Positions 1-53,740 are shown, counted from the first letter of the stretch. The stretch: DNA of 64,000 nt from IMGVR_UViG_3300007770_001284:62001-126000; one strand, 5' to 3'. Notes: generated from the sequence alone by a model not told the origin. Numbers and translations are program-made.

Positions 1-2
1 TC

Positions 3-638: not shown

Positions 639-649
639 GTGAAAATTAG

Positions 650-1450: not shown

Positions 1451-1458
1451 GAGAAATA

Positions 1459-2424: not shown

Positions 2425-2428
2425 TAAA

Positions 2429-4604: not shown

Positions 4605-4927
4605 GTAGTGATAAAAAGACATATGTGTTTGATTTGGATAATACGCTATGCGACACGAAGCGAAACGCTGATGATACAGCGTGGGGGTATTTAGACTCTA
4701 AGCCACATCTCGACAGAATAGAGAGAGTAAATGAGCTGTTTCAACAAGGTCACACAATCATTATAGAGACAGCTCGTGGCTCGTTTTCCAAGGTTAATTG
4801 GTATATCCAGACCCATGAGCAATTAACGTCGTGGGGCCTGAAATTCCATCAGTTAAGAACGGGCGTAAAATTTGCTGCCGACTATTTTATTGATGACAAG
4901 GCAATAAATTCAGAGGAGTTTTTTTAG
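4601..4927 (+). CDS. Small HAD-family capsule-type phosphatase (EcbF-like)
   Basis: FDLDNT, TARG and K..ADYFIDDKA; ATGA overlap with the upstream gene at 4601. Confidence 0.75.
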   Translation: MSSDKKTYVFDLDNTLCDTKRNADDTAWGYLDSKPHLDRIERVNELFQQGHTIIIETARGSFSKVNWYIQTHEQLTSWGLKFHQLRTGVKFAADYFIDDKAINSEEFF

Positions 4928-8535: not shown

Positions 8536-8544
8536 GGATGAATC

Positions 8545-9396
8545 GTGCACAGTATTATATTGACCATCCATAATGGCGCGAGACGTATGGCTGATGGCGA
8601 AATATTACTGGAAAGAGTGCTAGATGGTCTCATCAATAATTCGGTGGGCGATTATGAATTATTATGTATGCTGGATGGATGTACCGACGGTTCAGAATTA
8701 ATTGTTGAAAAATATATTGATTCGAGTAAGCACTTAGACATTCGTGCAATTATCACACCAGACATATATGAGCTTCGAACAAATAACGTTGGATTTAAAG
8801 CGTCGAAAGGTGAGTATGTCATAGTCGTTCAGGATGATCAAATTGTGACAGAGCCCGGATGGAACCGGCGGATGCAAGAACCATTTGACGTATTTGATGA
8901 TGTCTTCGCAGTAACTGCCAGAACAGCGCACAATTGGATTTTGAATCCTAATAGCAAACATTTTGGAACAGATACGATTTTAGACAATTGTTGGTGTGAT
9001 ATTTTTCTAGCGACAGATCATGCTTATGGGTATCCTATACAGATGACAAATTATAAAAGAGATGAATTTGCTGTGAGAGGGACAGTTAACCGAGGACCCT
9101 TGATGATCAATCATAAAGATTTAAGAAGTATGAATTATCTCGATGATGAGTTCGCTCCTTGTGATATGGACGATCATGACTTAATGTTTAGAGCGTACAA
9201 ACAACTTGGGAAAATTTGCGGCGGTTATCGAATTGGTGTTGAGTCAAAACCAGCCTGGAGTGGGTCGACAGTCAGCGGATCTGTACCGCCATGGGCGCTA
9301 CGATCTCATCACAAAAATTGTAGAATTTTTTATAGTAGAAACAAAGATGTCCTGACTGAACGTCGTATTGTGGAAAATCGTAGAATTACTCATTAA
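8545..9396 (+). CDS. Glycosyltransferase family 2
   Basis: ILTIHN, DGCTDGS, NVGF..SKGEYVIVVQDD and DDHDL. Confidence 0.8.
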   Translation: MHSIILTIHNGARRMADGEILLERVLDGLINNSVGDYELLCMLDGCTDGSELIVEKYIDSSKHLDIRAIITPDIYELRTNNVGFKASKGEYVIVVQDDQIVTEPGWNRRMQEPFDVFDDVFAVTARTAHNWILNPNSKHFGTDTILDNCWCDIFLATDHAYGYPIQMTNYKRDEFAVRGTVNRGPLMINHKDLRSMNYLDDEFAPCDMDDHDLMFRAYKQLGKICGGYRIGVESKPAWSGSTVSGSVPPWALRSHHKNCRIFYSRNKDVLTERRIVENRRITH

Positions 9397-9420
9397 AAAT
9401 GGAGCAAGGATTTATAGACC

Positions 9421-10158
9421 ATGATTGATCTAACCAGAGGATTTGTCTTTATTCACATTGGTAATTGTGCAGGGACAAGTATAGAATACTCCTTACGTGC
9501 TCCATCGACCGAGCTGGTCCCCTGGGATAACAAAGGCGCTACACAGCACCTTACATATTCTGAAATTAAACGCTGGTATTTGGTTCGAGCCTCCCGACCT
9601 GGCCCAATTGGTAAGCATTTGGTACCAGATATATACGCTAAATTCGATAGCTTGTTTAAGTTTACAGTCATAAGAAACCCATGGGATAGAATGGTTGCGA
9701 AATATAGACATGAAGCAAGGCCTTGGAACCAGTGGCTCGAGATTTGCAAAAGCGGTGTGAAAGCAGGGCCCTCATTTAAAGAATTTCTTTTGGGGAGCAA
9801 AGATTGGAATGTTCATGATTTAAACGACCCATTGTTCGACCACCGCCACTGGGCACCATTCCTTAATTGGTTTGGGAAAGATGACCTAAATTTTTATATA
9901 GGGTTTGATAATCTGGACGAAGATTATCAAAAAGTGTGTGGAATACTGGGTATACAAGATGCTCCCTTAAAAGATTTATTTCCAGATATAGGCGGACCAA
10001 TTAGGGCTCCAAATAGGAAATTAGACGAAAGAGGTAATGCACGACGACATTACAGCTATTATTATGATCAAGAGTCAATAGATTTTATTGCAAAAAGATT
10101 TAAAGAAGACATTGATTTTTTTGGGTTTGAATTTGAAGACAAACGACATGCTAAATAA
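9421..10158 (+). CDS. Sulfotransferase family 2-like protein (altered PAPS-binding motif)
   Basis: FVFIHIGNCAGTS, FKFTVIRNPWDR and C-terminal Y..YYD...F..DI..FGFEF. Confidence 0.75.
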   Translation: MIDLTRGFVFIHIGNCAGTSIEYSLRAPSTELVPWDNKGATQHLTYSEIKRWYLVRASRPGPIGKHLVPDIYAKFDSLFKFTVIRNPWDRMVAKYRHEARPWNQWLEICKSGVKAGPSFKEFLLGSKDWNVHDLNDPLFDHRHWAPFLNWFGKDDLNFYIGFDNLDEDYQKVCGILGIQDAPLKDLFPDIGGPIRAPNRKLDERGNARRHYSYYYDQESIDFIAKRFKEDIDFFGFEFEDKRHAK

Positions 10159-10188
10159 TCATTGGATTGTTGAGAATAGGAGAATAAA

Positions 10189-10833
10189 ATGAGCTTTGCT
10201 GAGTATTTCAAGAAAGAGTTTTATAACAGGCTGCTTAGTCCGAATCACCCTGCAACTGTGCCGCGTGATAGAGCGAGTTGTTTATTGAAGATATTTGAGT
10301 TACTAGATGAAAAAAAGAGTAATGGTCAAAATTATTTTCGTATAGTAGAAACGGGTACAACTCGTCCTGACCATGGACACTTGTGTTTTGGTGATGATGG
10401 GTGCGGTACTTACATTTTTGATAAATTTGTAAACCATTATGATGGGGAAGTATTGTCTGTTGATATCGATGAAAAAAATTGTCGGTACTCTAATGCTCTG
10501 ACATCTGAGAAAACGAAGGTATTCTGTCAAGATTCTGTTGAGATGTTATGGTCTTTACCCGTTGACTTTAAGATTGATTTTCTTTATCTCGATTCTTTTG
10601 ATTTTTCCGCTGAAGACCCCCACCCTTCGATGCTTCATCATGTGAAGGAGCTTTGCGCTGTTATGAAAAATTTAAATCCAGGTGCTTTAATTGTGGTTGA
10701 TGATCATAACGTCGTTGATGATGAGTCTTCGCCAGAGGGTAAAATAGGAAAAGGCTCTTATGTAAAAGACTTCATGTGTAATATAGGCGCGGAGCTGCTT
10801 TTTGAAGGATACCAGATTGGGTGGAAGCTGTGA
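10189..10833 (+). CDS. Class I SAM-dependent methyltransferase (paralog of the 2429 N-domain)
   Basis: IVETGT, SVDI, DFLYLDSFD and IVVDD. Confidence 0.75.
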   Translation: MSFAEYFKKEFYNRLLSPNHPATVPRDRASCLLKIFELLDEKKSNGQNYFRIVETGTTRPDHGHLCFGDDGCGTYIFDKFVNHYDGEVLSVDIDEKNCRYSNALTSEKTKVFCQDSVEMLWSLPVDFKIDFLYLDSFDFSAEDPHPSMLHHVKELCAVMKNLNPGALIVVDDHNVVDDESSPEGKIGKGSYVKDFMCNIGAELLFEGYQIGWKL

Positions 10834-11609
10834 CTTGGGGCCCCACTATAGTCTATTATCTAGATGAGCTTAAAATTGCTTATATAGAGATAAAAAAAGC
10901 CGGTTGCACGACTGTCAAGACCTCCCTTGCGAATTATCTTCTTGAAATTGCTGGGGGGTTAGGCCATCACCAAAAATATAAGCCCAATATAGACGGTGTT
11001 GATTACAATTACGGAACATCGATTCATGATGAGTATTTTACGTGGGCCGGGCAATGGAACAGAGTCCAGTCTTTAGGTGATGATTGGACTGTGTTTACTA
11101 TTGCAAGAGAACCAATCGAGAGGTTTGTTTCTGCATTCTATTCCAACGCAGATAGACCATTTTTATACTCGGATATTAACGAGTATATTACAAATCATTT
11201 CTTATATGAAGATGGTTTACTTTCGACCGTGGGCCACAAAAAAATAAATTTGCATAAATTTCGAGAGGATGGTCATATAGTACCGCAGCACAAAATTTTA
11301 GCCAACGTCTCGGCGCGCATCGACTATATAGGGCACTTAGATGATATGGATTCAGCTTCACATTACATAAGCAGCGTTATACGTGATGATAATTTTAAGT
11401 TTGTTCATGCAAATGCCCGTCCATTAAAAAAGCTCAGCGATGATCGCTTTGGACAACCTCGCGAGAAACGGAATTTCGGATGGCCCCGCTTGACAAAAGA
11501 GTCATTGGATATTTTGTTAGAGTTTGGATATAGACAAGATTATGAACTTTTTGATAGGTACGATCCGGAAAAATGGTTACACAATGTATGGGACGGAATT
11601 ATAAGATAG
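10821..11609 (+). CDS. Sulfotransferase family 2 protein
   Basis: IEIKKAGCTT (5'-PSB), REPIERFVSAFY (3'-PB), HIVPQ and DYELF. May start at GTG 10830. Confidence 0.75.
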   Translation: MEAVTWGPTIVYYLDELKIAYIEIKKAGCTTVKTSLANYLLEIAGGLGHHQKYKPNIDGVDYNYGTSIHDEYFTWAGQWNRVQSLGDDWTVFTIAREPIERFVSAFYSNADRPFLYSDINEYITNHFLYEDGLLSTVGHKKINLHKFREDGHIVPQHKILANVSARIDYIGHLDDMDSASHYISSVIRDDNFKFVHANARPLKKLSDDRFGQPREKRNFGWPRLTKESLDILLEFGYRQDYELFDRYDPEKWLHNVWDGIIR

Positions 11610-12394
11610 CGAACGCTTTGGAAGACATACGCATAGCCGCGTATTTTGGTGGACTGGGTGACAGCCTGCAATTTTCGACGCTTCCAGAACTATTTTCTGA
11701 AGCGGGACACGATGTTTATGTTTGGGACAAAGCATACTTCAGAAATCCTGAGATAAAAGAGCTTGTGTGGGACTGTAATCCTTTTGTGAAGGGAGAGAGA
11801 GCAGGACAATGGAATGCTGGAGACATCCCCGGGCTAAAGTATGAAAATTTATCTGGTAATGTTATCTCTAACTGGGAAACGTTGTTTGGGTTCAAGCCAA
11901 CAAACAAATACCCAAAAATATATTACGAGCCAAAAGATACAAGCAAGGCTAGAAATTCTATTTTGCTAGACTTAACATCAATATCTGGTGATTATCGAGG
12001 CTATTCCGTGTCGGAAGCCGTGGATAAACTGGTTTCTATGTATCCTGGAAGAAGCATATACCAATTGACATTTCACAACTCTTTGAACAACCCTCCAGCA
12101 AGCAATAAAATACAAGAACCATGGAGTAGTCCAAATAATCAAAGATTTTTGTACAATGATTTTGAAAGTGAAAAGATTGTGGTGAATTCGATATTCGAAT
12201 ATTGCGATATGATTTATTCTAGTGATGTTTTTATCACGCTTCATTCAGGGGGTCATGCAGTTTCTAGTGCGATCAAAGAATATAACAGCGATTTAGAGGT
12301 TCACTCTATAATTCGAAAAGTCGATTATGATTACTGCATTCCTCGTGGATTCTTTTTATTCGATAATATCAAATACTCTGTAATTGCCAGGTAA
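11573..12394 (+). CDS. GT9 (heptosyltransferase)-like GT-B glycosyltransferase
   Basis: GGLGDSL..S, NPFV and FITLHSGGHAV; lies directly upstream of the heptose adenylyltransferase. Start uncertain. Confidence 0.55.
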   Translation: MVTQCMGRNYKIANALEDIRIAAYFGGLGDSLQFSTLPELFSEAGHDVYVWDKAYFRNPEIKELVWDCNPFVKGERAGQWNAGDIPGLKYENLSGNVISNWETLFGFKPTNKYPKIYYEPKDTSKARNSILLDLTSISGDYRGYSVSEAVDKLVSMYPGRSIYQLTFHNSLNNPPASNKIQEPWSSPNNQRFLYNDFESEKIVVNSIFEYCDMIYSSDVFITLHSGGHAVSSAIKEYNSDLEVHSIIRKVDYDYCIPRGFFLFDNIKYSVIAR

Positions 12395-12398
12395 TAAA

Positions 12399-12797
12399 TT
12401 GGACAGACATATTTCAAGAAAGGTTGTTTTTACAAATGGGTGTTTCGATATTTTGCACAGGGGACATATAGAGCTCCTACGCTATTGTAACTCTTTGGGG
12501 TACGTTATTGTTGGGTTAAATAGTGATACTAGCGTGAAGAAGTTGAAAGGTAATGGACGACCTTTTTTTTCTCAAGACGATCGAAAATTCATGCTTGAGG
12601 CATGTAGATACGTAGACGAAGTCCGTATTTTTGACGGTGATACGCCATTAGAGATGGTAAAAAATATTTCACCCGATGTGATGGTTAAGGGCGGTGATTA
12701 CGCGCCAGAAGAAGTCGCCGGGAGTGAAGTATGTGAAGTTAAGATATTCAAATTTATCGGTGGTTATTCTACAACAAAAATTCTAGAGAGAGGTTAG
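12399..12797 (+). CDS. hldC: D-glycero-beta-D-manno-heptose-1-phosphate nucleotidyltransferase (RfaE domain II / HldC)
   Basis: FTNGCFDILHRGH, GLNSD.SV..LKG..RP, VKGGDY and GYSTT. TTG start at 12399 preferred over the track start at 12384. Confidence 0.9.
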   Translation: MDRHISRKVVFTNGCFDILHRGHIELLRYCNSLGYVIVGLNSDTSVKKLKGNGRPFFSQDDRKFMLEACRYVDEVRIFDGDTPLEMVKNISPDVMVKGGDYAPEEVAGSEVCEVKIFKFIGGYSTTKILERG

Positions 12798-12799
12798 AG

Positions 12800-13159
12800 T
12801 TGTCAACTTCATTAGAGATCAAATTTGTACCGAAAGGGTGGGGATTTGAGAAGTGGATTGTTAATTGCGATGAGTATTGCGGAAAGCTCCTGTATTTCGT
12901 TAGGGGGAAGTGTTGTTCTTGGCATTACCATGAGTTAAAAGACGAGGTGTTTTATGTCCAGTCGGGCCGAGTTTTAGTCAAGTACTCTGAGGGTGATGAC
13001 ATAAATGAAGCAGATGAAGTTGTTCTGGGCCCTGGCCAAAATTTTCATGTCTATAGGGGTCTTCGCCACAGAGTGATAGCTTTAGAAGACACAGAGCTTT
13101 TTGAATTTTCTACGCAACATTTTGATAGTGATAGTCTTAGGATTGAAAAGGGTGACTGA
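12800..13159 (+). CDS. Cupin-fold protein (sugar isomerase-like)
   Basis: KGWG.E.W, HYH..KDE and distal H (LRHR) metal ligands. Confidence 0.75.
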   Translation: MSTSLEIKFVPKGWGFEKWIVNCDEYCGKLLYFVRGKCCSWHYHELKDEVFYVQSGRVLVKYSEGDDINEADEVVLGPGQNFHVYRGLRHRVIALEDTELFEFSTQHFDSDSLRIEKGD

Positions 13160-13813
13160 ATGCGCAGAGTTTTGATTACCGGTTGTAGCAGGGGTCTTGG
13201 AAAACACCTCATGAATCATTTTGATTTAAATGATTGTGAAGTTTTTAGGCATACTCGACAGCCTCTAAGCGGAAAAAACCAGTTAGCGGGTGATATAAAC
13301 GCTGATAATTTTTGTGATAATTTGGAAGCATTCGTGGAGGCCAACCAAATTGAGGTTTTTGTGAACAATGCTGCTATCCACAGCCCTCGCGCTTTTCTAG
13401 AATATAGTGAAGCAGATATCAAGGATGTTTTGAACACAAATTTAGTGTCTCAAATATTGATGATACAACGTGTATATAGGATTTTTAAAAAGCGTAATAA
13501 AGGCACAATAGTCAATATTAATTCTCTTGCCGGGCGAGGTCCGTCTGCCAACGAAACGGTGTATTGCGCAAGCAAATACGGTCTAAGAGGGTTTTCTGAG
13601 TCTTTGCAAATCGAGTCGATTGGAACCGATATAAAGATTCTTGATTTTTATCCAGGAGCAATGAAAACTGGCATGTGCAAAAACAGAAGCAATTATGACG
13701 ACCTCATGGACCCGGACGAAGTCGCAGAAACGATTGTTAATATTGTCTTAAAAGAAAGAACTACAATTCTTCCGACAGAAACGATAATTCGTCGATTTTT
13801 GTCAGGAAAGTAA
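13160..13813 (+). CDS. Short-chain dehydrogenase/reductase
   Basis: TGCSRGLG, NNAA, NS and YCASK. Confidence 0.9.
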   Translation: MRRVLITGCSRGLGKHLMNHFDLNDCEVFRHTRQPLSGKNQLAGDINADNFCDNLEAFVEANQIEVFVNNAAIHSPRAFLEYSEADIKDVLNTNLVSQILMIQRVYRIFKKRNKGTIVNINSLAGRGPSANETVYCASKYGLRGFSESLQIESIGTDIKILDFYPGAMKTGMCKNRSNYDDLMDPDEVAETIVNIVLKERTTILPTETIIRRFLSGK

Positions 13814-13817
13814 GGAA

Positions 13818-14834
13818 ATGATTATGAGAGCAGCAATTTTAGAAAAGCTTAATTCTCCACTGACCATCAGAGAGGTTGAACTAACCCCCTTGAAGGTTGG
13901 TCAAGTGCTGGTTAGGATATTAGTAAGCGGGTTATGTGGCGCGCAGTTGCACGAAATAAGGGGACACAAGGGTAACGCAAAATTTCTACCGCACTTAATG
14001 GGACACGAGGGCTGTGGTATTGTTGAGAGCATCGGTAGCGGTGTGACAACAGTTTCCCCGGGTGATAAGGTGGTGATGCACTGGAGGCCCAGTACAGGTA
14101 TCGAAGCGCCATTCCCTGAATACATCCTTAATGGAAAAAAAATAAGCAGCGGAAAGGTAACAACGTTAAGCGAATACTCGATTGTTTCTGAAAACAGATT
14201 GACTGTTGTTCCTCCAGACACTCCCGATAATTTTTGCGCTTTGCTTGGGTGTGGATTGACAACAGCGCTTGGAATTATAGACAACGAAATAGATCTTAAA
14301 ATGGGCGAAAGTGTACTGGTTGTTGGATGCGGAGGTGTGGGGCTGAACCTAATACAAGGTGCAAAGCTAAAGAGCGCTTATCCAATTATCGCTGTTGACG
14401 TTTCCGAAGATAAGCGTATAAAAACCCTCGAGGTCGGTGCATCAACCTTTATTAATCCGCTTAAAGATGATATGACTGCTATTTCTGTCGATGTCATTAT
14501 AGACACAACAGGAAATTCAAGGGTGATTGGCTCTATGGTTCATCATCTTTCTAAAAACGGTAGAATTGTTCTTGTGGGACAGCCCTCCCCAGAAGAAGAA
14601 CTAACTATCCCTAATGGCGTTACTCTTTTTGGTGGCTCTGGAAAATCTATTAAAGCTAGCCAGGGTGGAAAAACTAATCCAGCTGAAGATATACCTCGGT
14701 ATGTTAAGATGCACGATGCAGGTCTCCTAGACGTTGATAAAATTGTTACTCATACATTTACGCTAGAGCAAGTCAATGAAGCGTTTGATCTTTTGCAAAC
14801 GGGTACTGCTGGTCGAATTATGGTGAAGATGTGA
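13818..14834 (+). CDS. Zn-dependent medium-chain dehydrogenase
   Basis: GLCG, GHEG, LGCG and GCGGVG. The structural-Zn four-Cys lobe is absent. Confidence 0.9.
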   Translation: MIMRAAILEKLNSPLTIREVELTPLKVGQVLVRILVSGLCGAQLHEIRGHKGNAKFLPHLMGHEGCGIVESIGSGVTTVSPGDKVVMHWRPSTGIEAPFPEYILNGKKISSGKVTTLSEYSIVSENRLTVVPPDTPDNFCALLGCGLTTALGIIDNEIDLKMGESVLVVGCGGVGLNLIQGAKLKSAYPIIAVDVSEDKRIKTLEVGASTFINPLKDDMTAISVDVIIDTTGNSRVIGSMVHHLSKNGRIVLVGQPSPEEELTIPNGVTLFGGSGKSIKASQGGKTNPAEDIPRYVKMHDAGLLDVDKIVTHTFTLEQVNEAFDLLQTGTAGRIMVKM

Positions 14835-15643
14835 GTGGTAGCGTTCAAAGATTTTTAGAAGAAATTAAGATTTATGATTGCGGGTTTCAAAAAATAAGAA
14901 TCGGAAACAAGTCAGACGGTGGATATGTTGCTCTTCATGAAATCTGTGAAAATACCAGAACACTATACGCTTTCGGCGTAGAGGATAATATTACGTTTGA
15001 ACAGGATTTTGTAGATAAGTTCCCACACACAGCTGTGAAATTATTCGACCACACAGTCGATAGGCTACCAGCAGAACACCCCAATTTTGCTTTTATTAAA
15101 AAAGGAATTGCCGCAAAAAAGTCAGATCAATTTTTAGCATTGTCAGACATGATTGATTCTGAGGTCGGTGGTTTGACTATTAAGATGGATATTGAGTGGG
15201 ATGAATGGGCAACGCTAGCATCTCTTAGTAGCAAGCAATTGAAAAAGATTGATCAGTTATTAGTTGAATTTCATTTAATCGCTGTGGACACTGATGAAAA
15301 ATTTATTGCCAATCCCAACGATGACTACGGGCTAACTCCTTATTTTGATTCATTTTATAGATCAGTTTATCAGAAGATAAATGTTGGATTGTTTGACATG
15401 TATTACGATGTGATGAAGACCCTTAATGAAAATTTTTACGCTTTTCATATCCACCCAAATAATTCTTTGGGAAAGATTAACGTCGATGGGCATTGTTTTC
15501 CTCCGCTTATTGAAGTAAGTTTTGTGAGAAAAGCGCTGGTAAAAGATGTCAGCGCTTCAACGTGTAATTTTCCTATATCGGGATTAGATTTTCCAAATAA
15601 ACCTTACAAAAAAGAAATTCAAGATTATTATCCATTAGCTTGA
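14831..15643 (+). CDS. FkbM/Methyltransf_22-like methyltransferase
   Basis: RIGNKSDGGY, FGV, KMDIE, QLLVEFH and HIHPNN. Confidence 0.75.
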   Translation: MSGSVQRFLEEIKIYDCGFQKIRIGNKSDGGYVALHEICENTRTLYAFGVEDNITFEQDFVDKFPHTAVKLFDHTVDRLPAEHPNFAFIKKGIAAKKSDQFLALSDMIDSEVGGLTIKMDIEWDEWATLASLSSKQLKKIDQLLVEFHLIAVDTDEKFIANPNDDYGLTPYFDSFYRSVYQKINVGLFDMYYDVMKTLNENFYAFHIHPNNSLGKINVDGHCFPPLIEVSFVRKALVKDVSASTCNFPISGLDFPNKPYKKEIQDYYPLA

Positions 15644-15652
15644 GGGGAAAGA

Positions 15653-16393
15653 ATGCTGAACAAAAGATCAAAACAGATAAGACGCGAAACCATAAAGCTA
15701 TCCAAAGCAAACGGTGGCTATCATTACGGTGGTTGTTTTTCCGCTGTTGAATTGTTGGTTTCTTTATACGATTATGTGTTAACAGACAACGACAAATTTA
15801 TCTTAAGTAAGGGTCATGCTTGCTGGCCCTATTATGTTTTATTGAGAGAGAGGGGATTCAATCCAAGGTTACAGGGTCACCCCACACTAGACGAAAAGAA
15901 CGGAATTCATTATACCACCGGTAGTGAGGGGCATGGTTTTCCAGCCGCGATAGGAATGGCGCTAGCTAGAAAAATGAAAAACAAGCCCGGGAAAATATAC
16001 GTGATTGTAGGCGATGGAGAGTGTCAGGAGGGAACGACATGGGAATCGTTGCTGCTAGCAGCGCATTACAAGCTAGACAATCTTGTCATAATAGCTGACT
16101 GGAACGGGATACAGGGATCTGGATATACGAAAGACATTTTGCCTATTCCGAATATGGAAAAAGTTACAGCGCTTCTTGGATGGCATGTTTCACAAGTTGA
16201 TGGACATTCTTATGCTGAAATCTTGGCTGCTCTAGAGGAACACGAAAAAGATAAGCCCAGATTTATAATAGCTAATACGATAAAGGGGAAAGGAGTCAGC
16301 TATATGGAGAACCAACCATGTTGGCACGCTCAGTGGCCGGCCCCTGATTATGAAGAACAGGCGATGAAAGAGCTGGAGGATTGTGAAGAATGA
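15653..16393 (+). CDS. Transketolase-like N-terminal (ThDP-binding) subunit
   Basis: H.GG..S, FILSKGH, GDGECQEG..WE, TIKGKG and WH. Confidence 0.9.
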   Translation: MLNKRSKQIRRETIKLSKANGGYHYGGCFSAVELLVSLYDYVLTDNDKFILSKGHACWPYYVLLRERGFNPRLQGHPTLDEKNGIHYTTGSEGHGFPAAIGMALARKMKNKPGKIYVIVGDGECQEGTTWESLLLAAHYKLDNLVIIADWNGIQGSGYTKDILPIPNMEKVTALLGWHVSQVDGHSYAEILAALEEHEKDKPRFIIANTIKGKGVSYMENQPCWHAQWPAPDYEEQAMKELEDCEE

Positions 16394-16872
16394 GACGTGC
16401 TTTTGGAAGAGTAATTGTGAAGTTGGCTGAAAAAGATGAGAACATTGTTTTAGTGACTGGAGATGTTGAACAAGAGATGGAGGAATTCAAAGATCGATGG
16501 CCAGAACGATATTTGAACGCTGGGCTCTGTGAGCAATCAATGATCAGTATGGTTGCAGGAATGGCTCTGGAGGGCTTACGTCCAGTTGTCTATTCTATTA
16601 CCCCCTTTCTTATTGAGAGACCGTTTGAGCAGATCAAAATAGACATCGATGAGCAGAAGTTACCTGTAATGCTGGTAGGACAAGCTGATTATCCGACCCA
16701 TGGACCGACACACCGCCCATTAAACCCAGAGGGGCTGATTGGGCTTTTAAAAAATACAATTGGGTATTTCCCCAGAAATCAACAGGAAACTGAAAAAGCA
16801 ATGATCGACGCATATCTTATGGCTGAACCAGCGATTATCTGCATTAAGAGAGACGGTCTTCCCTTTTTCTAA
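16390..16872 (+). CDS. Transketolase-like pyrimidine-binding subunit (no C-terminal domain)
   Basis: P.RYLNAGLCEQ, GMALEG..P, ERPFEQIK and GPTH; only 160 aa. Confidence 0.85.
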   Translation: MRRAFGRVIVKLAEKDENIVLVTGDVEQEMEEFKDRWPERYLNAGLCEQSMISMVAGMALEGLRPVVYSITPFLIERPFEQIKIDIDEQKLPVMLVGQADYPTHGPTHRPLNPEGLIGLLKNTIGYFPRNQQETEKAMIDAYLMAEPAIICIKRDGLPFF

Positions 16873-16886
16873 AATTTAAGTTAAGC

Positions 16887-17636
16887 GTGAGAATGAAAAA
16901 GATATTGGTCATAGGAGAAAGTTGTCAGGATATTTTTGTCTATTGTAATGCAAGCCGCTTATGTCCAGATATTCCTGTTCCTGTTCTAAATGAAAAATAT
17001 CGGACTGACAACCCGGGTATGGCTGCTAATGTTCATCGAAACATTCACGCCTTGGGTGTGACAAGCGATATTATTACAAACGATAACTGGGGGGATATTA
17101 CTAAAAAACGGTACGTTCATGAAGAGAGTAATCACATGTTCTTTAGGGCCGATTCGGTAGACGAAATAGAAAGAATAGACTTAAGCGTGATATCATATGA
17201 TTATGACCTGATTGTAATATCAGACTATGATAAGGGTTTCTTGACTGAAGCAGATATAAAAATAATATGCTCAAACCATAATAACGTATTTATTGATTCT
17301 AAGAAAATTTTAGGGACGTGGGTTCATGATGCTAGATATATCAAGATCAATCATACAGAATACCAGCGCTCGAAAAGCTATATTGATAAAACAATGTTCG
17401 AAAAAATTATTCGGACTGAAGGCCCAAGAGGGTGTGTATATAGGGAAGTGGTCTATCCAGTCAACAAGGCTGAGGTAAAAGATGTATCGGGCGCGGGCGA
17501 TAGTTTTCTAGCGGCTCTTGTGGTAAAGTTTTTAGAAAATTCTGATATAATAGAAAGTATAAAATTTGCAAATAAGTGCGCTTCTGAAATTGTTACAAAG
17601 AGGGGGGTTTCAACGATACAATGCAACGTGTATTAG
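16887..17636 (+). CDS. hldA: Heptose-7-phosphate kinase (RfaE domain I / HldA, PfkB family)
   Basis: RLCPD.PVPV, GMAANV, ISDYDKG and DVSGAGDSF. Confidence 0.85.
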   Translation: MRMKKILVIGESCQDIFVYCNASRLCPDIPVPVLNEKYRTDNPGMAANVHRNIHALGVTSDIITNDNWGDITKKRYVHEESNHMFFRADSVDEIERIDLSVISYDYDLIVISDYDKGFLTEADIKIICSNHNNVFIDSKKILGTWVHDARYIKINHTEYQRSKSYIDKTMFEKIIRTEGPRGCVYREVVYPVNKAEVKDVSGAGDSFLAALVVKFLENSDIIESIKFANKCASEIVTKRGVSTIQCNVY

Positions 17637-18439
17637 TCACAGGAGCTGACGGTTTTATTGGGAAGAATCTTGCCGCAACCCTAAAAGAAGAAGCGCAAAT
17701 TTTTTGTTTGTCTGAAGACAATTTGGATGACGCTAGATGGAAAGACGTGTGGAACCATTTTCTGGAAGAGGCGTCTCCTGCTGTCATTTTTCATGTCGGC
17801 GCGTGTTCCGACACATTAGAACAAAACGTTAATTTTATGATGCATCGAAATTATGAGACAACAAAGTTTCTAATGGATTGGTGCGTCAACAATAGCGTTC
17901 CAATGATTTACTCTTCTTCTGCTGCAAGCTATGGAGTGACTGAAGACTATCCATCGAACTTATATGGATGGAGTAAGTACGTCGCAGAAGATTATGTGGT
18001 GAGTAATTCTGGCATCGCATTACGTTATTTTAATGTGTATGGCCCGGGGGAGGAACGCAAGGGGAAGATGGCGTCGATTGTGTATCAGATGTACAAAAGG
18101 CACCAAGGAAATTTGGAGTGCAAGTTATTTCCAAAACGACCTCTTCGAGATTTTGTGTATGTGAAAGATGTTGTGTCTGCAAACATTCATGCTTACAAGA
18201 ATTACGAATCGTTAAGAGGATCATACTACGATGTTGGTAGCGGTCAATCAAGGGCATTTGAGGATATTCTTGATTTGCTAGAAATCGAATATTCTTATCA
18301 CTCCACTCACACGATTCCAGAGGGCTATCAATTTTTCACCTGCAGCGATAAAGAAAAGTGGCTACCGGGCTGGGCCCCAGAGTATCAGCTCGAAGCAGGA
18401 ATCGAGGATTATGGAAAAGTATTACGATTACAGCGTTGA
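17621..18439 (+). CDS. hldD: ADP-L-glycero-D-manno-heptose 6-epimerase
   Basis: TGADGFIG, HVGACSDT, SSAASYG, YGWSK, RYFNVYGPGEERKGKMAS and RDFVYVKD. Confidence 0.85.
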   Translation: MQRVLVTGADGFIGKNLAATLKEEAQIFCLSEDNLDDARWKDVWNHFLEEASPAVIFHVGACSDTLEQNVNFMMHRNYETTKFLMDWCVNNSVPMIYSSSAASYGVTEDYPSNLYGWSKYVAEDYVVSNSGIALRYFNVYGPGEERKGKMASIVYQMYKRHQGNLECKLFPKRPLRDFVYVKDVVSANIHAYKNYESLRGSYYDVGSGQSRAFEDILDLLEIEYSYHSTHTIPEGYQFFTCSDKEKWLPGWAPEYQLEAGIEDYGKVLRLQR

Positions 18440-19070
18440 CGATTATCAATTCGTCGAAGCCATATCTGGTTTATTTGATTGTGGTAATTTACAGTATCTG
18501 CATGAAATGCACATTGACGAATATGAGTTTTTTGATAAGCCGGGAAAAGATTCGGATACCATATTCCATCAAAAGTTTTATAACAAAATGAGATCTGGCT
18601 GGCCAGAATTTCTTGAATTATATCAAAAATTTATTAGAGAATTTATAGCTCCCATTACTAATGCGAAAGACCAACTCATATATCAAAAGTGGCCTACATT
18701 TCGGGTACACCTCCCAAATAACGTAGCAGTGGGCGGATGGCATAAGGATAGCGACTACAATCACCCTCTTGGGGAGACAAATTTTATACTTGCATTAACT
18801 CCTATGTTCGAGAGTAATACAACTATTGCGGAAAGCGAGCCGGGGAAGATGGATTTTCATCAGCTTGAATTAATGCCTGGTCAGATTGTGCGCTTTAATG
18901 GAAACCAGTGCACTCATGGAAACCTCCCTAACAAGACTGGCGTTACCAGGGTGAGTTTCGATTTTAGGATCATGATGCCAGAAGACTATAACTCAAATTA
19001 TCGCTTAACTTCGCTAAGCAAAGGAAACAAATTTCTTATTGGTCACTATTATGAGGTTATGGAGATATGA
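18411..19070 (+). CDS. StrG-like Fe(II)/2OG-type oxygenase
   Basis: PTFRVHLP, HKD (HxD) and HGN..N.TG.TRVSFDFR. Confidence 0.6.
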   Translation: MEKYYDYSVDDYQFVEAISGLFDCGNLQYLHEMHIDEYEFFDKPGKDSDTIFHQKFYNKMRSGWPEFLELYQKFIREFIAPITNAKDQLIYQKWPTFRVHLPNNVAVGGWHKDSDYNHPLGETNFILALTPMFESNTTIAESEPGKMDFHQLELMPGQIVRFNGNQCTHGNLPNKTGVTRVSFDFRIMMPEDYNSNYRLTSLSKGNKFLIGHYYEVMEI

Positions 19071-19993
19071 GGGTTGTAATCACAGGCGGAACAGGGATGG
19101 TCGGAGCTGGATTTCGAAGCATAGAGACAGAGCATGAACTTATATTTGTTGGCTCGAAAGATTATGACTTAAGATATCTTGATGATACTCGATGTATGGT
19201 GAGGGACCACTGTCCTGAAGCAATAATACATCTTGCTGCCAGGGTGGGCGGAGTAAAGGGCAACTCTGATTTTGTCGCGGACTTTTTTTCTGATAATATT
19301 CGGATAAATACAAACGTCTTGTCGGTTGCACATAAGCTTGGAGTAGGGAAGGTTGTTTCTTTGTTATCAACTTGCGTATACCCTGATGCAGTTGTGTATC
19401 CTCTAACAGAAGAGCAGATTCATGACGGTGAGCCGCACCCCAGCAACTTTGGTTATGCGTACGCTAAGAGGATGCTGGACGTACACTCAAGGGCCCTTCG
19501 TCAGCAATATGGATGTAACTTCATCTGCGCAGTGCCAAACAATCTGTACGGTCCTTATGATAATTTTGATTTAGAAAATGGGCATGTCATACCATCGATA
19601 ATAAGAAAGGTGTGGGAAGCAAAGCAAACGGGAAATCCACCTGTTCTTTGGGGCGATGGGTCTCCATTAAGGGAATTTACGTACTCAAGAGATATTGCAA
19701 TTGCGTTGCTTTTTTTATTAGAAAATTATGATTTGGCTGCTCCTGTGAATATAGGCACGACAAACGAGGTAAGCATCAAAAACATAGTGAGCATGATTTG
19801 TGAAAGTTTAGAATACGACGGAGAAATTGTTTGGGATATTACAAAGCCAAGCGGTCAATTTAAGAAACCAAGCTCTAATAAGCGCTTTCTTTCTCTTGGT
19901 TGGCCATCTGCCTCGTATACGCCTCTGCGGAAGGGTATACAATTGACATGCAAATGGTTTAAGGAAAGCTATCCAAATGTAAGGGGAGTTTGA
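19067..19993 (+). CDS. fcl: GDP-L-fucose synthase
   Basis: GGTGMVG, HLAARVGG, STCVYP, YAYAKR, PNNLYGP.DNF, HVIP and WGDGSPLREF. Confidence 0.93.
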   Translation: MRVVITGGTGMVGAGFRSIETEHELIFVGSKDYDLRYLDDTRCMVRDHCPEAIIHLAARVGGVKGNSDFVADFFSDNIRINTNVLSVAHKLGVGKVVSLLSTCVYPDAVVYPLTEEQIHDGEPHPSNFGYAYAKRMLDVHSRALRQQYGCNFICAVPNNLYGPYDNFDLENGHVIPSIIRKVWEAKQTGNPPVLWGDGSPLREFTYSRDIAIALLFLLENYDLAAPVNIGTTNEVSIKNIVSMICESLEYDGEIVWDITKPSGQFKKPSSNKRFLSLGWPSASYTPLRKGIQLTCKWFKESYPNVRGV

Positions 19994-20703
19994 AAATGAA
20001 TGTCTTAGTTCCAATGGCTGGCGCGGGCAGTCGATTTATGTCTGCGGGCTACGTTCTACCAAAGCCATTAATCGACGTTGATGGTACTCCAATGATACAA
20101 ACTGTTGTTGAAAATCTCGGTTATGATGCAACTTATATTTTTGTCGTTCAGGCTTCGCATTACCACGAATATGGTCTTGCAAGTTTTTTGGAATCTATAG
20201 CTCCAGGGTGTAAAATAGTCTTGGTAGACGGAATGACAGAGGGAGCAGCGTGTACAACACTTTTGGCTAGAGACTATATCGCTAATAATGACTCGCTACT
20301 GATTGTTAATTCTGACAATGTATTCGATTGGGACAACATGGCATTCTTAAGAGACGCAACGCAACCCGGCGTTGATGGGTGTATTCTTGTATTTAACGGT
20401 ACGAACCCAAAATGGAGCTTCGCGAAGACGGACGAAACAGGCCGAGTAACGGAAGTAGCTGAAAAAAAGCCCATCAGCGATATAGCCACTGCTGGAGCAT
20501 ATTTTTGGGCAAGAGGCTCTGATTACGTACAAGCAGCAAGTCAAATGATAGAAAAAGATATAAGGACTAATAACGAATTCTATGTCTGTCCAGTATACAA
20601 TGAGTTAATCAATAATGGTGGCTACGTTACAGTGTCATACGTCGAGAAGATGTGGGGACTTGGAACGCCAGAAGACTTACAATATTATTTGGAGCATCAC
20701 TAG
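19990..20703 (+). CDS. Capsule-type nucleotidyltransferase
   Basis: PMAGAGSRF...PKPLI, TEGAACT, EVAEK, NEFYVCPVYN and LGTPEDL. Confidence 0.85.
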   Translation: MKMNVLVPMAGAGSRFMSAGYVLPKPLIDVDGTPMIQTVVENLGYDATYIFVVQASHYHEYGLASFLESIAPGCKIVLVDGMTEGAACTTLLARDYIANNDSLLIVNSDNVFDWDNMAFLRDATQPGVDGCILVFNGTNPKWSFAKTDETGRVTEVAEKKPISDIATAGAYFWARGSDYVQAASQMIEKDIRTNNEFYVCPVYNELINNGGYVTVSYVEKMWGLGTPEDLQYYLEHH

Positions 20704-20704
20704 T

Positions 20705-21337
20705 TTGGGATATACGTCTTTTATTTTTGACAATGACGGGGTGCTTGTAGACACCACTGAGCTACAAGTTAAAGCAACGCTAGCAGCAATTGACGAGGTC
20801 TTGAATTTAAAGCTAACAACTCAAGAAGATATTTCTGTCCTTAAGTCAACTATAACTACTCGTGATAAGCTCATAAAGCTTTGTCAAAAGGGGTACTTTA
20901 CTCTTAATAAAGTAGACGCTGTATACGAAAGAAAAAAAATAATCACAAATAAAATGATGAGTATGTTAGACTCTGAAGACTATCAAGACAAAATTGAAAT
21001 GTTTGAATTTTTACGACGAGAAAATAAAAACATAGCGGTAGTAACGAATGCGAACCGTGCTTCGACAGTTACACTACTAAATAATCTTGGTTTTATGAAG
21101 TACCTAGATGTGTTAATAACGAATAATGATGTAAAGAACACAAAGCCACACGCCGAACCATATGTTAGGGCGATGCTTCAATTAGGCGGCTCAATTGAGG
21201 ACTTCATAATATTCGAAGACTCTGTAACAGGTTTAGCCTCGGCTCGCGGCTCAGGCGCAACTGTTTACGAGATCAGCAATTTTAGAGATGTAAATACCCA
21301 ATTGATGGAAGAAATAATAGCGGGAAATTACAAATGA
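20705..21337 (+). CDS. HAD-superfamily phosphatase (beta-PGM-like)
   Basis: FDNDGVL, VTN, KPHAEPY and EDS..G. TTG start at 20705 after GGAG preferred over the track start at 20615. Confidence 0.85.
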   Translation: MGYTSFIFDNDGVLVDTTELQVKATLAAIDEVLNLKLTTQEDISVLKSTITTRDKLIKLCQKGYFTLNKVDAVYERKKIITNKMMSMLDSEDYQDKIEMFEFLRRENKNIAVVTNANRASTVTLLNNLGFMKYLDVLITNNDVKNTKPHAEPYVRAMLQLGGSIEDFIIFEDSVTGLASARGSGATVYEISNFRDVNTQLMEEIIAGNYK

Positions 21338-21792
21338 TTTTTATTGCTCATCGAGGAAACACCAACGGCCCCGTGCCGTCCTTAGAAAATAATCCAGACT
21401 ATATTGATAAAGCGCTACAGGCAGGTTTCTATGCTGAGGTCGATGTTCGGCAGGGTGAAAGTTCCGAAACGTTTATTGTGGGTCATGATTTTGGTGAATA
21501 CCAATTAGATATTTCTTGGTTCCTCCAGCGCAGAGAAAAATTGTTTATTCATGCTAAAGACTTAAGCACGTATGCTTATTTTCTAAGTGATAATCAAGTG
21601 TGGCATGTTTTCTGGCATCAAAACGACGCATACACCATGACATCTTCCGGATATATATGGGCGTATCCCGGTAGCGAATTAAACGATAAGTGTATATGTG
21701 TGATGCCAGAAACAGCGTCATATTCCTCTGAGCAATTATCGATATGTGCAGGTATTTGCAGCGATTATGTTGCTTCAATGTACAGCGGGTAG
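21334..21792 (+). CDS. Truncated glycerophosphodiester phosphodiesterase-like protein
   Basis: IAHRGN, EN, EVDV, GHD, HAK and GICSDY. Confidence 0.75.
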   Translation: MIFIAHRGNTNGPVPSLENNPDYIDKALQAGFYAEVDVRQGESSETFIVGHDFGEYQLDISWFLQRREKLFIHAKDLSTYAYFLSDNQVWHVFWHQNDAYTMTSSGYIWAYPGSELNDKCICVMPETASYSSEQLSICAGICSDYVASMYSG

Positions 21793-21837
21793 TGTATGCT
21801 AAAACATCTTCTAAAATTCTAATATTATTTTGTTTAT

Positions 21838-23897: not shown

Positions 23898-23908
23898 ATG
23901 CATATCAC

Positions 23909-23935
23909 AACTTCTATAATATATCATAGGAAGTT
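23909..23935 (+). promoter_or_regulatory. Sigma70-like -10 box (TATAAT 23915-23920) inside an imperfect inverted repeat that overlaps the SD
   Basis: aacttctat-aatatatc-ataggaagtt upstream of the nuclease ATG; no clear -35. Confidence 0.4.
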
Positions 23936-23938
23936 TAT

Positions 23939-24811: not shown

Positions 24812-24874
24812 AAGCATTATGTAGCATATACGATAAGCCCTTGTCATTTATGATTATCTCGATGAGGTACGTGT

Positions 24875-26128: not shown

Positions 26129-26129
26129 C

Positions 26130-48842: not shown

Positions 48843-48868
48843 TACCGGCTACCACGTTGCTTTTCGTA

Positions 48869-48875
48869 ATATTTA
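48869..48875 (+). promoter_or_regulatory. Candidate late promoter ATATTTA
   Basis: Member of the ATANTTA set; ends 23 nt before ATG 48899. Confidence 0.5.
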
Positions 48876-48898
48876 GTGTTACGTAACGGGAATGTTGA

Positions 48899-53737: not shown

Positions 53738-53740
53738 CCT

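What the first reader, a model, noticed from the sequence alone, without database searches (positions are those of the whole stretch)
13160..16872. Minimal split transketolase with SDR and Zn-dehydrogenase: possible branched-chain or higher-carbon sugar synthesis
Seen: a 246-aa ThDP subunit and a 160-aa Pyr subunit with no third (C-terminal) domain; the usual TGSLG reads TGSEGHG. It sits next to an SDR and an MDR. The cassette has an RmlB-like dehydratase but no recognisable RmlC/RmlD. Known: ThDP enzymes add C2 units to NDP-4-keto-6-deoxysugars (YerE for yersiniose, AviB1/B2 in avilamycin). Inference: either a branched sugar is made, or the enzyme supplies sedoheptulose-7-P to the flanking heptose kinase.
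Basis: partly seen in the sequence, partly recalled or inferred. Interest (0 to 1): 0.6.

Follow-up and report, generated by a model that had tools for sequence, protein, structure and literature searches.

The report
Minimal two-domain transketolase in phage sugar module
A marine jumbo phage carries a stripped-down two-subunit transketolase-like enzyme that is genuine and widespread, mostly in viruses, and always sits among sugar-tailoring genes, so it most likely builds an unusual sugar for a glycan rather than serving central metabolism.

Summary
Window 15653-16393 encodes a 246-aa ThDP-binding subunit (TKN) and 16390-16872 a 160-aa Pyr subunit (TKP). No transketolase C-domain exists here or anywhere in the 254.7-kb record, and independent assemblies show the same junction.

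The window belongs to a T4-like jumbo phage from seawater. The pair is a real family: more than 2000 homologues of TKP, almost all 160 aa among those listed, mostly viral. TKN and TKP co-occur in 109 of 116 loci.

In phages they form a conserved module: ADH-like MDR, FkbM-like methyltransferase, TKN, TKP, SDR. This module often lies beside a heptose-type activation set or GT9 'heptosyltransferase' fusions. In SAR11, Chlorobium and others the pair lies in glycan islands beside GmhA/HldE. Two of three genomes checked also hold a full-length transketolase, and all three hold a DXS-sized protein. Equivalent SAR11 islands carry the same pair with the C-domain.

The catalytic His and Glu residues are kept. 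The sugar-phosphate and acceptor-site residues are not.

Best reading: a dedicated two-carbon (ketol) transferase that builds an unusual heptose-linked sugar for a methylated, sulfated glycan assembled on a soluble target. The exact reaction is unknown. Its S7P-supply idea is disfavoured. Its branched or higher-carbon sugar idea stays open.

The parts
15653..16393 (+). TKN: 246-aa ThDP (PP-domain) subunit of the minimal transketolase-like enzyme
   Evidence: Pfam Transketolase_N 3.9e-29. Closest solved chain is the split-TK N subunit 6YAK, E 9e-53. H24, H55, H76, G120-D-G, N151 and H225 are kept across 115 family members. NCBIfam transketolase 186 bits against a cut-off of 488.
16390..16872 (+). 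TKP: 160-aa Pyr-domain subunit, no C-terminal domain; ATGA overlap with TKN
   Evidence: Pfam Transket_pyr 8.1e-21 over residues 1-156. PDB: DXS 8A29 8e-14 and split-TK C subunit 6YAJ 2e-12, aligned to residues 36-197 of 341. More than 2000 homologues; 116 of the 120 listed are exactly 160 aa. Forms a clade apart from TK, DXS and E1beta, support 97/96.
13818..14834 (+). Zn-dependent MDR of the alcohol-dehydrogenase type; commonest partner of the pair in phages
   Evidence: Pfam. Nearest PDB chains are class I/III ADHs, 5e-46. Catalytic Zn ligands C40, H62, C144 and NAD-type D203 are conserved; the structural-Zn lobe is absent. Present in 43 of 48 viral loci.
14831..15643 (+). FkbM-like class I methyltransferase-fold protein (no Pfam hit)
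   Evidence: AF2 pLDDT 89.6. VIA: METTL13 5wcj Z 11.9, FkbM 2py6 Z 11.1 over residues 1-232. Foldseek finds O-methyltransferases. Present in 25 of 48 viral loci. FkbM domains are fused to GT9 and SDR in L105 and L106.
13160..13813 (+). Classical SDR (217 aa), probable ketoreductase of the module
   Evidence: adh_short 3e-34. S122/Y135/K139 conserved, R33 after beta2. 40% identical to the C-terminal SDR domain of the GT9-FkbM-SDR fusion in L105. Present in 35 of 48 viral loci.
12800..13159 (+). Small cupin, sugar ketol-isomerase or epimerase
   Evidence: Cupin_2. Profile hits D-lyxose ketol-isomerase 2y0o 2e-8, D-lyxose/D-mannose isomerase 7nzo 1.6e-6, CapF 5.5e-5. The fold search ties CapF, Pac13, KdgF, PMI and lyxose isomerase at Z 14-16.
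12384..12797 (+). RfaE-domain-II-like nucleotidyltransferase (137 aa)
   Evidence: TIGR02199 146 bits, below the 181.5 cut-off. Co-occurs with the pair in 14 viral and 42 cellular loci, where it is usually part of an HldE-like fusion.
16887..17636 (+). Short PfkB kinase related to HldE domain I (probable start ATG 16893)
   Evidence: TIGR02198 114.6 bits against a cut-off of 345; the N-terminus aligns to HldE residues 11-101. Present in 19 viral loci.
17621..18439 (+). HldD-like extended SDR (272 aa)
   Evidence: TIGR02197 heptose_epim 202 bits against a cut-off of 274.6; SSAASYG motif.
4586..4927 (+). 113-aa HAD-like phosphatase that travels with the nucleotidyltransferase and cupin in other phages
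   Evidence: Weak PNK3P/HAD and EcbF-BcbF capsule-phosphatase hits. Adjacent to the NT and cupin in L094-096 and L126-133.
1..27290 (+). Glycan island holding the module (starts at G000 58.8 kb, upstream of the window)
   Evidence: GT2, GT11, GT7C-like and GT4 glycosyltransferases, two sulfotransferases, NDP-sugar dehydrogenase, GMD, Fcl-like enzyme, 4,6-dehydratase, RmlA-like NT. No polytopic membrane protein among about 35 genes.

Best explanation
TKN and TKP are the two subunits of a real ThDP enzyme of the transketolase superfamily that has lost the C-terminal domain and some loops. It is not a pentose-phosphate enzyme. It is the carbon-carbon bond-forming step of a conserved sugar-building module (ADH-type MDR, FkbM-like methyltransferase, TKN/TKP, SDR). 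That module works together with heptose-type activation genes (cupin isomerase/epimerase, PfkB kinase, small HAD phosphatase, RfaE-II-like nucleotidyltransferase, HldD-like epimerase). Favoured mechanism (inferred, not shown): the NAD-type MDR oxidises a primary alcohol of a heptose-type (or hexose-type) intermediate to an aldehyde. The ThDP enzyme transfers a two-carbon glycolaldehyde (ketol) unit from a ketose donor onto it. The SDR reduces the new keto group and the methyltransferase O-methylates the product. The resulting unusual higher-carbon sugar is nucleotide-activated and used by the island's glycosyltransferases. The glycan is also fucosylated and sulfated, and it is assembled in the cytoplasm on a soluble acceptor, most likely phage virion proteins.
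For: Shown. (1) Real family with fixed architecture: more than 2000 homologues, almost all 160 aa among those listed; the C-terminus is conserved whatever gene follows; TKN and TKP are together in 109 of 116 non-identical loci; ATGA overlap. (2) ThDP and catalytic residues are conserved. (3) Module conservation in viral loci: MDR 43, SDR 35 and FkbM-like 25 of 48. In 25 viral loci with complete context, 24 have an NAD(P) oxidoreductase and 18 have a kinase/HldE or a GT9 fusion. (4) Fusions: GT9 + FkbM + SDR in one polypeptide beside MDR-TKN-TKP in L105 and L106. (5) Cellular loci: an HldE-like gene in 51 of 82 and extended SDRs in 72 of 82; GmhA (SIS_2) in 17. (6) Extra paralogue: of three carrier genomes checked, two hold a full-length TK and all three a DXS-sized protein. 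The pair was found in only 8 of 201 sampled genomes of the SAR11 family. (7) Equivalent SAR11 islands carry TKN plus a 304-329-aa TKP with a true Transketolase_C domain, so this is a glycan-island TK lineage in which the C-domain is dispensable. (8) No Wzx, Wzy or initiating transferase in the island, which lies in the structural-gene region. Inferred. The direction of the MDR (NAD-type Asp203, ADH-like Cys-His-Cys Zn site) and of the SDR (Arg33) comes from motifs. The changed substrate site comes from the alignment to 6YAJ plus textbook TK residues: the Arg358 equivalent (R2) is kept, while the Ser385, His461, Asp469 and Arg520 equivalents (E29, Q98, H104, R154) are not conserved. Precedent for a two-component TK recruited as a C2 donor: NapB/NapD (PMC7570522).
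Against: No biochemical datum exists for any member. Donor and acceptor are unknown. The module order and cofactor arguments are circumstantial. This phage has no GT9 and no GmhA, so the heptose link rests here on three homologues that all score below their NCBIfam cut-offs. A kinase lies directly beside the pair in both phage and cellular loci, and the cupin looks like a ketol-isomerase. Both fit equally well a role before activation, that is, simply making a ketose. The residue equivalences rest on a 2e-12 alignment. The protein target of the glycan is untested. The phage also has a probable DNA-modification cluster. The heteromer prediction could not be run.
Confidence: 0.5

Rival explanations
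1. Ordinary transketolase activity. In this reading the phage (or the island) simply boosts sedoheptulose-7-P or another ketose phosphate. The cupin isomerase, kinase, phosphatase and nucleotidyltransferase then turn it into an ADP-heptose-like donor.
For: The TK catalytic histidines and Glu are kept. A kinase lies next to the pair in phage and cellular loci. The cupin resembles D-lyxose/D-mannose ketol-isomerases, which gives a complete ketose -> aldose -> 1-P -> NDP route. GmhA/HldE lie beside the pair in cells.
Against: Of three carriers checked, two already hold a full-length TK and all three a DXS-sized protein. Many phage loci have MDR-MT-TKN-TKP-SDR but no kinase or NT. The Ser385, His461, Asp469 and Arg520 equivalents are not conserved. 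The profile of the Pyr subunit scores classical TK at only 15-22 bits. The tight linkage to the MDR, SDR and methyltransferase is left unexplained.
Confidence: 0.2
2. Branch formation. In this reading the enzyme adds a two-carbon unit to a keto group of a nucleotide-activated ketosugar (functionally like YerE or AviB1/B2), giving a branched-chain sugar.
For: The island holds a true 4,6-dehydratase (21838-22848, TDE motif). Cellular islands hold C-methyltransferases, DegT aminotransferases and radical SAM enzymes typical of ketosugar tailoring. Phage loci without a kinase or NT imply action on an already activated sugar.
Against: Extended SDRs beside the pair are mostly SSS-x-YG epimerase type, not dehydratases. 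The partner MDR is of the ADH (alcohol/aldehyde) type. The enzyme belongs neither to the YerE (AHAS-like) family nor to the E1 alpha/beta families. Ketone acceptors are unusual for TK-type enzymes (general knowledge).
Confidence: 0.15
3. DXS-like or E1-like chemistry. In this reading the donor is a 2-oxoacid (pyruvate or hydroxypyruvate) that is decarboxylated, and the product is a deoxy-ketose or acyloin.
For: TKP is slightly closer to DXS (8e-14) and to E1beta (74-90 bits from the family profile) than to TK. TKN also hits DXP_synthase_N at 2.4e-16.
Against: TKN is far closer to the split TK (E 9e-53, 183 bits) than to any DXS (best E 7e-16, 62 bits). Its GDGECQEG...DxN and WH motifs are of the TK type.
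Confidence: 0.08
4. Artefact or decaying gene: a frameshifted or truncated split transketolase.
For: It is shorter than every solved transketolase; one cellular copy (Arenicellales, L063) does look truncated.
Against: Identical sequence in four assemblies and in contigs of an independent study. More than 2000 homologues of essentially the same length at 70-90% identity among the best hits. No C-domain remnant in the record. The next gene is a complete kinase.
Confidence: 0.01

Closest known systems
Split-chain transketolase of Carboxydothermus hydrogenoformans (PDB 6YAK/6YAJ)
   Same: Two polypeptides with PP and Pyr domains. TKN aligns over its whole length (E 9e-53), with the ThDP/metal motif and catalytic histidines. 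TKP aligns to the Pyr domain with the cofactor-activating Glu.
   Different: The solved enzyme's second chain carries the C-terminal domain (341 aa against 160). TKN lacks two loops of about 9 and 12 residues and the N-terminal segment. The sugar-phosphate and acceptor residues of the Pyr domain are not conserved. The genomic context is glycan synthesis.
'Partial' transketolase genes in SAR11/Fonsibacter hypervariable regions and the Nanopelagicales surface island (PMC6811365, PMC12817590)
   Same: The same kind of gene in the same kind of island. [quoted passage not shown] A 'distinct transketolase' lies in a cell-surface replacement island. My loci L047, L083 and L155-157 are of this type.
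   Different: Those papers only noticed the genes or tied them to the pentose-phosphate pathway. Not described there: the phage-borne form, the conserved MDR/MT/SDR module, the GT9 fusions, and the pairing of forms with and without the C-domain.
Two-component transketolase NapB/NapD (DinU/DinS) of tetrahydroisoquinoline antibiotic pathways
   Same: A split TK taken out of central metabolism to deliver a two-carbon unit from xylulose-5-P into a biosynthetic pathway (PMC7570522).
   Different: Those subunits are 306 and 754 aa and hand the unit to a lipoyl/ACP system. No E2-like or ACP gene accompanies the pair here.
YerE (yersiniose) and AviB1/AviB2 (avilamycin) ThDP enzymes
   Different: Different ThDP families (AHAS-like; E1 alpha/beta). 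TKN gives only a weak E1_dh hit (4e-5) and a weak TPP_enzyme_C hit (4e-7). The substrate was not tested.
ADP-L-glycero-D-manno-heptose pathway (GmhA, HldE, GmhB, HldD) and GT9/TibC heptosyltransferases
   Same: The kinase, nucleotidyltransferase and epimerase next to the pair are nearest to HldE-I, HldE-II and HldD. GmhA/HldE lie beside the pair in cells. GT9 domains, one with a weak TibC N-domain hit, are fused to module enzymes in phages.
   Different: All three window proteins score below the equivalog cut-offs and are shortened. This phage has no GmhA and no GT9. A cupin may replace GmhA.
Sulfo-transketolase SqwGH of sulfoquinovose degradation
   Same: A split TK acting on a non-phosphate sugar and followed by SDR- or ADH-type reductases (PMC13436972). 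Sulfur-related genes recur near the pair (sulfotransferases here; APS kinase and a TauE-like gene between TKN and TKP in L101).
   Different: That pathway is catabolic. Here the neighbours are glycosyltransferases, methyltransferases and activation enzymes, and the sulfur genes point to PAPS-dependent O-sulfation.

Membership tests
Transketolase (EC 2.2.1.1), canonical | PP domain with ThDP/Mg motif GDG...N and the catalytic histidines | tested here: met
   G120-D-G, N151, H24, H55, H76 and H225 are aligned to 6YAK and conserved in 115 sequences.
Transketolase (EC 2.2.1.1), canonical | Pyr domain with the cofactor-activating Glu | tested here: met
   E48 in the C-E-Q motif is aligned to AEQ of 6YAJ and DXS and is at least 90% conserved.
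Transketolase (EC 2.2.1.1), canonical | Third, C-terminal domain (PF02780) | tested here: not met
   TKP ends after the Pyr domain. No PF02780 match in the whole phage record, while the same search hit all 14 control genomes.
Transketolase (EC 2.2.1.1), canonical | Sugar-phosphate and acceptor-reading residues (E. coli Arg358, Ser385, His461, Asp469, Arg520) | tested here: not met
   By alignment to 6YAJ only the Arg358 equivalent (R2) is conserved; E29, Q98, H104 and R154 sit at variable columns. The equivalences are inferred from a 2e-12 alignment.
Transketolase (EC 2.2.1.1), canonical | Score above the NCBIfam equivalog cut-off | tested here: not met
   TKN 186 bits against 488; TKP 57 bits against 488.
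Transketolase (EC 2.2.1.1), canonical | X5P/R5P ketol-transfer activity | not testable with these tools
   Needs an enzyme assay.
[quoted passage not shown] | Single three-domain chain scoring above the DXS model cut-offs | tested here: not met
   TIGR00204 77 and 63 bits against 466. The protein is split and has two domains. The Pyr tree places it outside DXS.
2-oxoacid dehydrogenase E1 alpha/beta (AviB1/B2 type) | E1_dh alpha subunit plus a beta subunit with Pyr and C domains | tested here: not met
   E1_dh only 23 bits (E 4e-5, cut-off 22) against Transketolase_N at 102 bits. No C-domain. The clade is separate from E1beta.
Glycan-island split transketolase lineage (SAR11 HVR type; informal) | TKN/TKP pair embedded in a surface-glycan island beside HldE-type genes, additional to the housekeeping TK | tested here: met
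   Phage copies group with these in the Pyr tree.
ADP-heptose biosynthesis pathway | GmhA, HldE kinase, GmhB, HldE adenylyltransferase and HldD all present at equivalog level | tested here: not met
   Kinase 115/345, NT 146/181.5 and epimerase 202/274.6 bits. No SIS_2 in the record. The phosphatase is only a weak HAD.

The most novel reading that the evidence does not exclude
Tailed phages of the ocean (and some SAR11, Chlorobium and other cells) encode a previously undescribed route to a higher-carbon (C8/C9) or otherwise new heptose-derived sugar. A minimal two-domain transketolase extends an enzymatically generated sugar aldehyde by two carbons. The methylated, sulfated product is placed by phage glycosyltransferases, including TibC-like protein heptosyltransferases, on the phage's own capsid or fibre proteins.
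Probability: 0.2. Interest if true: 0.85.

Novelty: new variant of a known kind. Interest (0 to 1): 0.62.

Why it matters
If the reading holds, three things follow.

- The transketolase fold can work without its enigmatic C-terminal domain. Natural pairs with and without that domain in equivalent islands offer a direct test of what the domain is for.
- A very common but unannotated viral gene pair (atlas clusters of up to 1328 members, 61-80% viral) would mark a sugar pathway of unknown product. That pathway sits in marine phages and in the hypervariable surface islands of SAR11, the regions thought to govern phage-host recognition.
- It would add to the few cases of phages making their own complex glycans, here apparently without any membrane step.

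A compact 406-residue C-C bond-forming ThDP enzyme with a relaxed acceptor site would also interest biocatalysis.

Tried and rejected
- **Assembly error or frameshift restoring a C-domain:** rejected.
- **Next ORF as a hidden C-domain:** rejected. It is a PfkB kinase from its first residues.
- **Close homologues in GenBank phages:** none. All 15 hits are below 33% identity and are ordinary TK or DXS, several in records that are not phage genomes or are short unannotated fragments.
- **Literature:** searches for a characterised transketolase in heptose, O-antigen or higher-carbon sugar pathways found no functional study, only passing mentions.
- **YerE-type 4-keto-6-deoxy chemistry as the main context:** weakened by the SDR motif count.
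- **DNA glycosylation as the purpose of this island:** not excluded. However, a separate MilA-like + UDP-galactopyranose mutase cluster 110 kb away is the better candidate for that role.
- **Fold search of the cupin:** did not separate isomerase from epimerase.
- **Limits and operator notes:** No alternative genetic code was used.

Full report
**What is there.**
The interval holds five tightly packed genes on the + strand:
- SDR, 13160-13813
- Zn-type MDR, 13818-14834
- a 270-aa ORF, 14831-15643
- TKN, 15653-16393
- TKP, 16390-16872

Pfam gives Transketolase_N at 3.9e-29 for TKN. It gives Transket_pyr at 8.1e-21 over residues 1-156 of the 160-aa TKP. The TKN stop and TKP start overlap as ATGA, and TGSEGHG lies at 15917-15937.

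**Is the missing C-domain real?**
Yes, on five grounds.
- TKP ends at ...KRDGLPFF*, and the next ORF aligns from its N-terminus to the HldE kinase domain.
- A six-frame search of the whole 254,743-bp record finds no Transketolase_C. The same search hit all 14 control genomes.
- The stretch 13160-17636 is base-for-base identical in four IMG/VR contigs from four metagenomes.
- Logan contigs of four marine runs from two studies, one independent of the likely source, cross the TKP/kinase junction without any difference. These are contigs, not raw reads.
- The word-index search returned more than 2000 proteins; 116 of the 120 listed are exactly 160 aa, at 71-90% identity. The same C-terminus occurs in phages with different downstream genes.

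**Where the window comes from.**
It is part of a viral record.
- 209 of 225 ORFs lie on one strand.
- The record has a T4-type major head protein, a large terminase and a helicase. The head protein is nearest to those of Flavobacterium phage immuto, Microcystis phage Mel-JY01 and an uncultured 484-kb phage.
- The runs that hold the sequence are marine or seawater metagenomes.

The finding sits in a glycan island of about 30 kb (G000 58.8-89.3 kb; window 1-27290). The island holds:
- GT2, GT11, GT7C-like and GT4 glycosyltransferases;
- two sulfotransferases;
- an NDP-sugar dehydrogenase;
- GMD plus an Fcl-like enzyme;
- a true 4,6-dehydratase and an RmlA-like transferase.

None of its roughly 35 proteins is a polytopic membrane protein. 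Giant ORFs and a baseplate-wedge-like gene flank it.

**The family and its company.**
TKN and TKP occur together in 109 of 116 non-identical loci.
- *Viral contigs.* The recurrent partners are the MDR (43 of 48 loci), the SDR (35) and the 270-aa protein (25). Less often there is the kinase (19), nucleotidyltransferase (14), HldD-like epimerase (14) or cupin (13).
- *Typical short form.* The order is MDR, 270-aa protein, TKN, TKP, SDR, then a methyltransferase+GT9 fusion. It lies next to capsid, portal or terminase genes.
- *Fusions.* In L105 and L106 a single polypeptide joins a GT9 domain, an FkbM methyltransferase and an SDR. L105 also has a weak TibC N-domain hit, and its SDR domain is 40% identical to the window's SDR.
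- *Cellular genomes.* The pair occurs in Pelagibacteraceae single-cell genomes, the isolate Chlorobium phaeovibrioides BrKhr17, an Arenicellales chromosome, Anaerolineales and others. There it lies in glycan islands with HldE-like fusions (51 of 82 loci) and extended SDRs (72). The same islands hold a 221-aa methyltransferase (46), radical SAM enzymes (30) and DegT aminotransferases, APH-type kinases, PhyH, MDR, SDR and GmhA.
- *Mis-binning caveat.* Some MAG-labelled contigs show the phage-type order and may be mis-binned phage DNA. This was not tested.

Of three carrier genomes checked, two also hold a full-length TK (668-679 aa) and all three a DXS-sized protein (639-643 aa). In 201 sampled genomes of the SAR11 family only 8 have the short form. 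Three others carry, in an equivalent island, TKN plus a 304-329-aa TKP with a genuine Transketolase_C domain. The short form is thus a C-domain-less member of a glycan-island transketolase lineage.

A tree of Pyr domains puts the short TKPs in one clade (97/96) apart from TK, DXS and E1beta. The phage copies form a subclade (97/97). The tree is small, with a midpoint root and long-branch warnings. ESM Atlas clusters of this protein (54, 1328 and 93 members) are labelled 61-80% viral where taxa are known. No GenBank phage record has a close homologue.

**The neighbours inside the interval.**
- *The 270-aa ORF.* It has no Pfam or NCBIfam hit, but it folds confidently (pLDDT 89.6) as a class I methyltransferase. 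FkbM (2py6, Z 11.1, residues 1-232) is among the top matches.
- *The MDR.* It is nearest to class I/III alcohol dehydrogenases. It keeps the Cys-His-Cys catalytic zinc site and an NAD-type Asp, and it lacks the structural zinc lobe.
- *The SDR.* It keeps Ser-Tyr-Lys and an Arg after strand beta2.
- *The adjacent cupin (12800-13159).* Its sequence profile hits D-lyxose and D-lyxose/D-mannose ketol-isomerases (2e-8, 1.6e-6) and more weakly CapF. The fold search does not separate these.

**Active site.**
TKN is 183 bits from the split transketolase 6YAK, against 62 bits from the best-scoring DXS. It keeps the ThDP/metal motif and four histidines. TKP keeps the Glu, an N-terminal Arg, and a family motif (A-D-Y-P-x-x-G-P-T-H).

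By the alignment to 6YAJ, the positions matching E. coli Ser385, His461, Asp469 and Arg520 are E29, Q98, H104 and R154. These columns vary across the family. This equivalence is my inference from a modest alignment plus textbook residue roles. Asp469 is the residue whose replacement relaxes acceptor specificity in engineered transketolases (general knowledge).

**Interpretation.**
- *Shown:* a real, conserved, two-domain, two-subunit ThDP enzyme. It is an extra paralogue, it is genetically locked to an ADH-type MDR, an SDR and a methyltransferase, and it is repeatedly tied to heptose-type activation or transfer genes.
- *Inferred:* it forms a C-C bond in the synthesis of an unusual sugar.

My favoured sequence is oxidation of a primary alcohol (MDR, NAD+), ketol transfer (TKN/TKP), ketoreduction (SDR) and O-methylation. 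This would give a sugar two carbons longer than its heptose- or hexose-type precursor. I put about 0.3 on that detail and about 0.7 on the broader claim of a dedicated glycan-sugar enzyme rather than a pentose-phosphate enzyme. The alternatives are ketose supply to the activation set, branching on a ketosugar, and 2-oxoacid chemistry. They are listed with their tests.

Because the island lacks any membrane step and lies among structural genes, the glycan is probably built on a soluble target. Virion proteins are the likeliest target, and the GT9/TibC-like fusions in related phages point the same way. This remains untested.

**Known or new.**
Two papers noticed such genes. [quoted passage not shown] The other reported a 'distinct transketolase' in a Nanopelagicales surface island, read as a pentose-phosphate aid (PMC12817590). 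I found no functional study.

The nearest characterised precedent for a transketolase diverted to biosynthesis is NapB/NapD (PMC7570522). I class the finding as a new variant of a known kind.

**Limits.**
No biochemistry is available. Reads were available only as contigs. Co-occurrence counts come from loci found with peptide patterns of this phage's protein, so distant members are under-sampled.

Noticed in passing
outside the window: G000 197249-204000 (L153, L154): A thymidylate-synthase-family protein is closest to the CMP 5-hydroxymethylase MilA (E 6e-43, against 3e-23 for ThyA). It is followed directly by a UDP-galactopyranose mutase (E 3e-126), then an extended SDR and a second cupin. 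This looks like a cytosine hypermodification and glycosylation cluster, perhaps with a furanose sugar (compare PMC13326640).
   Followed up: partly
L155 (G048), L156 (G006), L157 (G123): Pelagibacteraceae islands of the same make-up (GmhA, HldE, APH kinase, MT, MDR, C-MT, DegT, DUF6016) carry TKN plus a 304-329-aa TKP that keeps a true Transketolase_C domain. They are natural counterparts of the C-domain-less form.
   Followed up: yes
L101 10611-12344; L114 10765-12835; also L099, L103, L118, L129: In several phages extra ORFs lie between TKN and TKP. L101 has a TauE-like permease, a small nucleotidyltransferase-like ORF and an APS kinase (PAPS supply?). L114 has a GIY-YIG/NUMOD3 homing endonuclease plus two unknown ORFs.
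   Followed up: partly
window 9421-10158 and 10821-11609: Two Sulfotransfer_2 genes lie in a phage glycan island. Together with APS kinase in L101 and ATP sulfurylase/APS kinase beside the SAR11 locus L083, this suggests the glycans are O-sulfated.
   Followed up: no
window 650-1450, 19067-19993, 22833-23897: A GT11 (fucosyltransferase family) gene, an Fcl-like gene and a GDP-mannose 4,6-dehydratase (456 bits, above cut-off) together give a phage-encoded GDP-fucose branch.
   Followed up: partly
window 2429-3826 and 10189-10833: The C-terminal part of the 465-aa ORF is 64% identical to the 214-aa ORF, an internal duplication within the island. Both have at most very weak methyltransferase hits.
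   Followed up: no
window 23939-24811: A PD-(D/E)XK nuclease-family gene sits between GMD and the GT4 genes. It is conserved at that place in related phage contigs L094-096.
   Followed up: no
window 35405-56104 and G000 46725-58606: Giant ORFs of 1191, 888, 2398, 1612 and 787 aa lie downstream of the island, and ORFs of 2148 and 1811 aa lie upstream. Several share repeated segments. None matched PHROGs, except a weak baseplate-wedge hit at 31994-33844. They are candidate glycosylation targets.
   Followed up: no
outside the window: G000 149802-151709: The major head protein (635 aa) matches T4-type capsid proteins in two pieces covering only about 58%. This implies a large inserted domain.
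   Followed up: no
L063 / L151 (Arenicellales chromosome): The TKP copy next to an intact TKN gives only a 110-aa open frame that matches profile positions 4-91. It may be a decaying copy.
   Followed up: no
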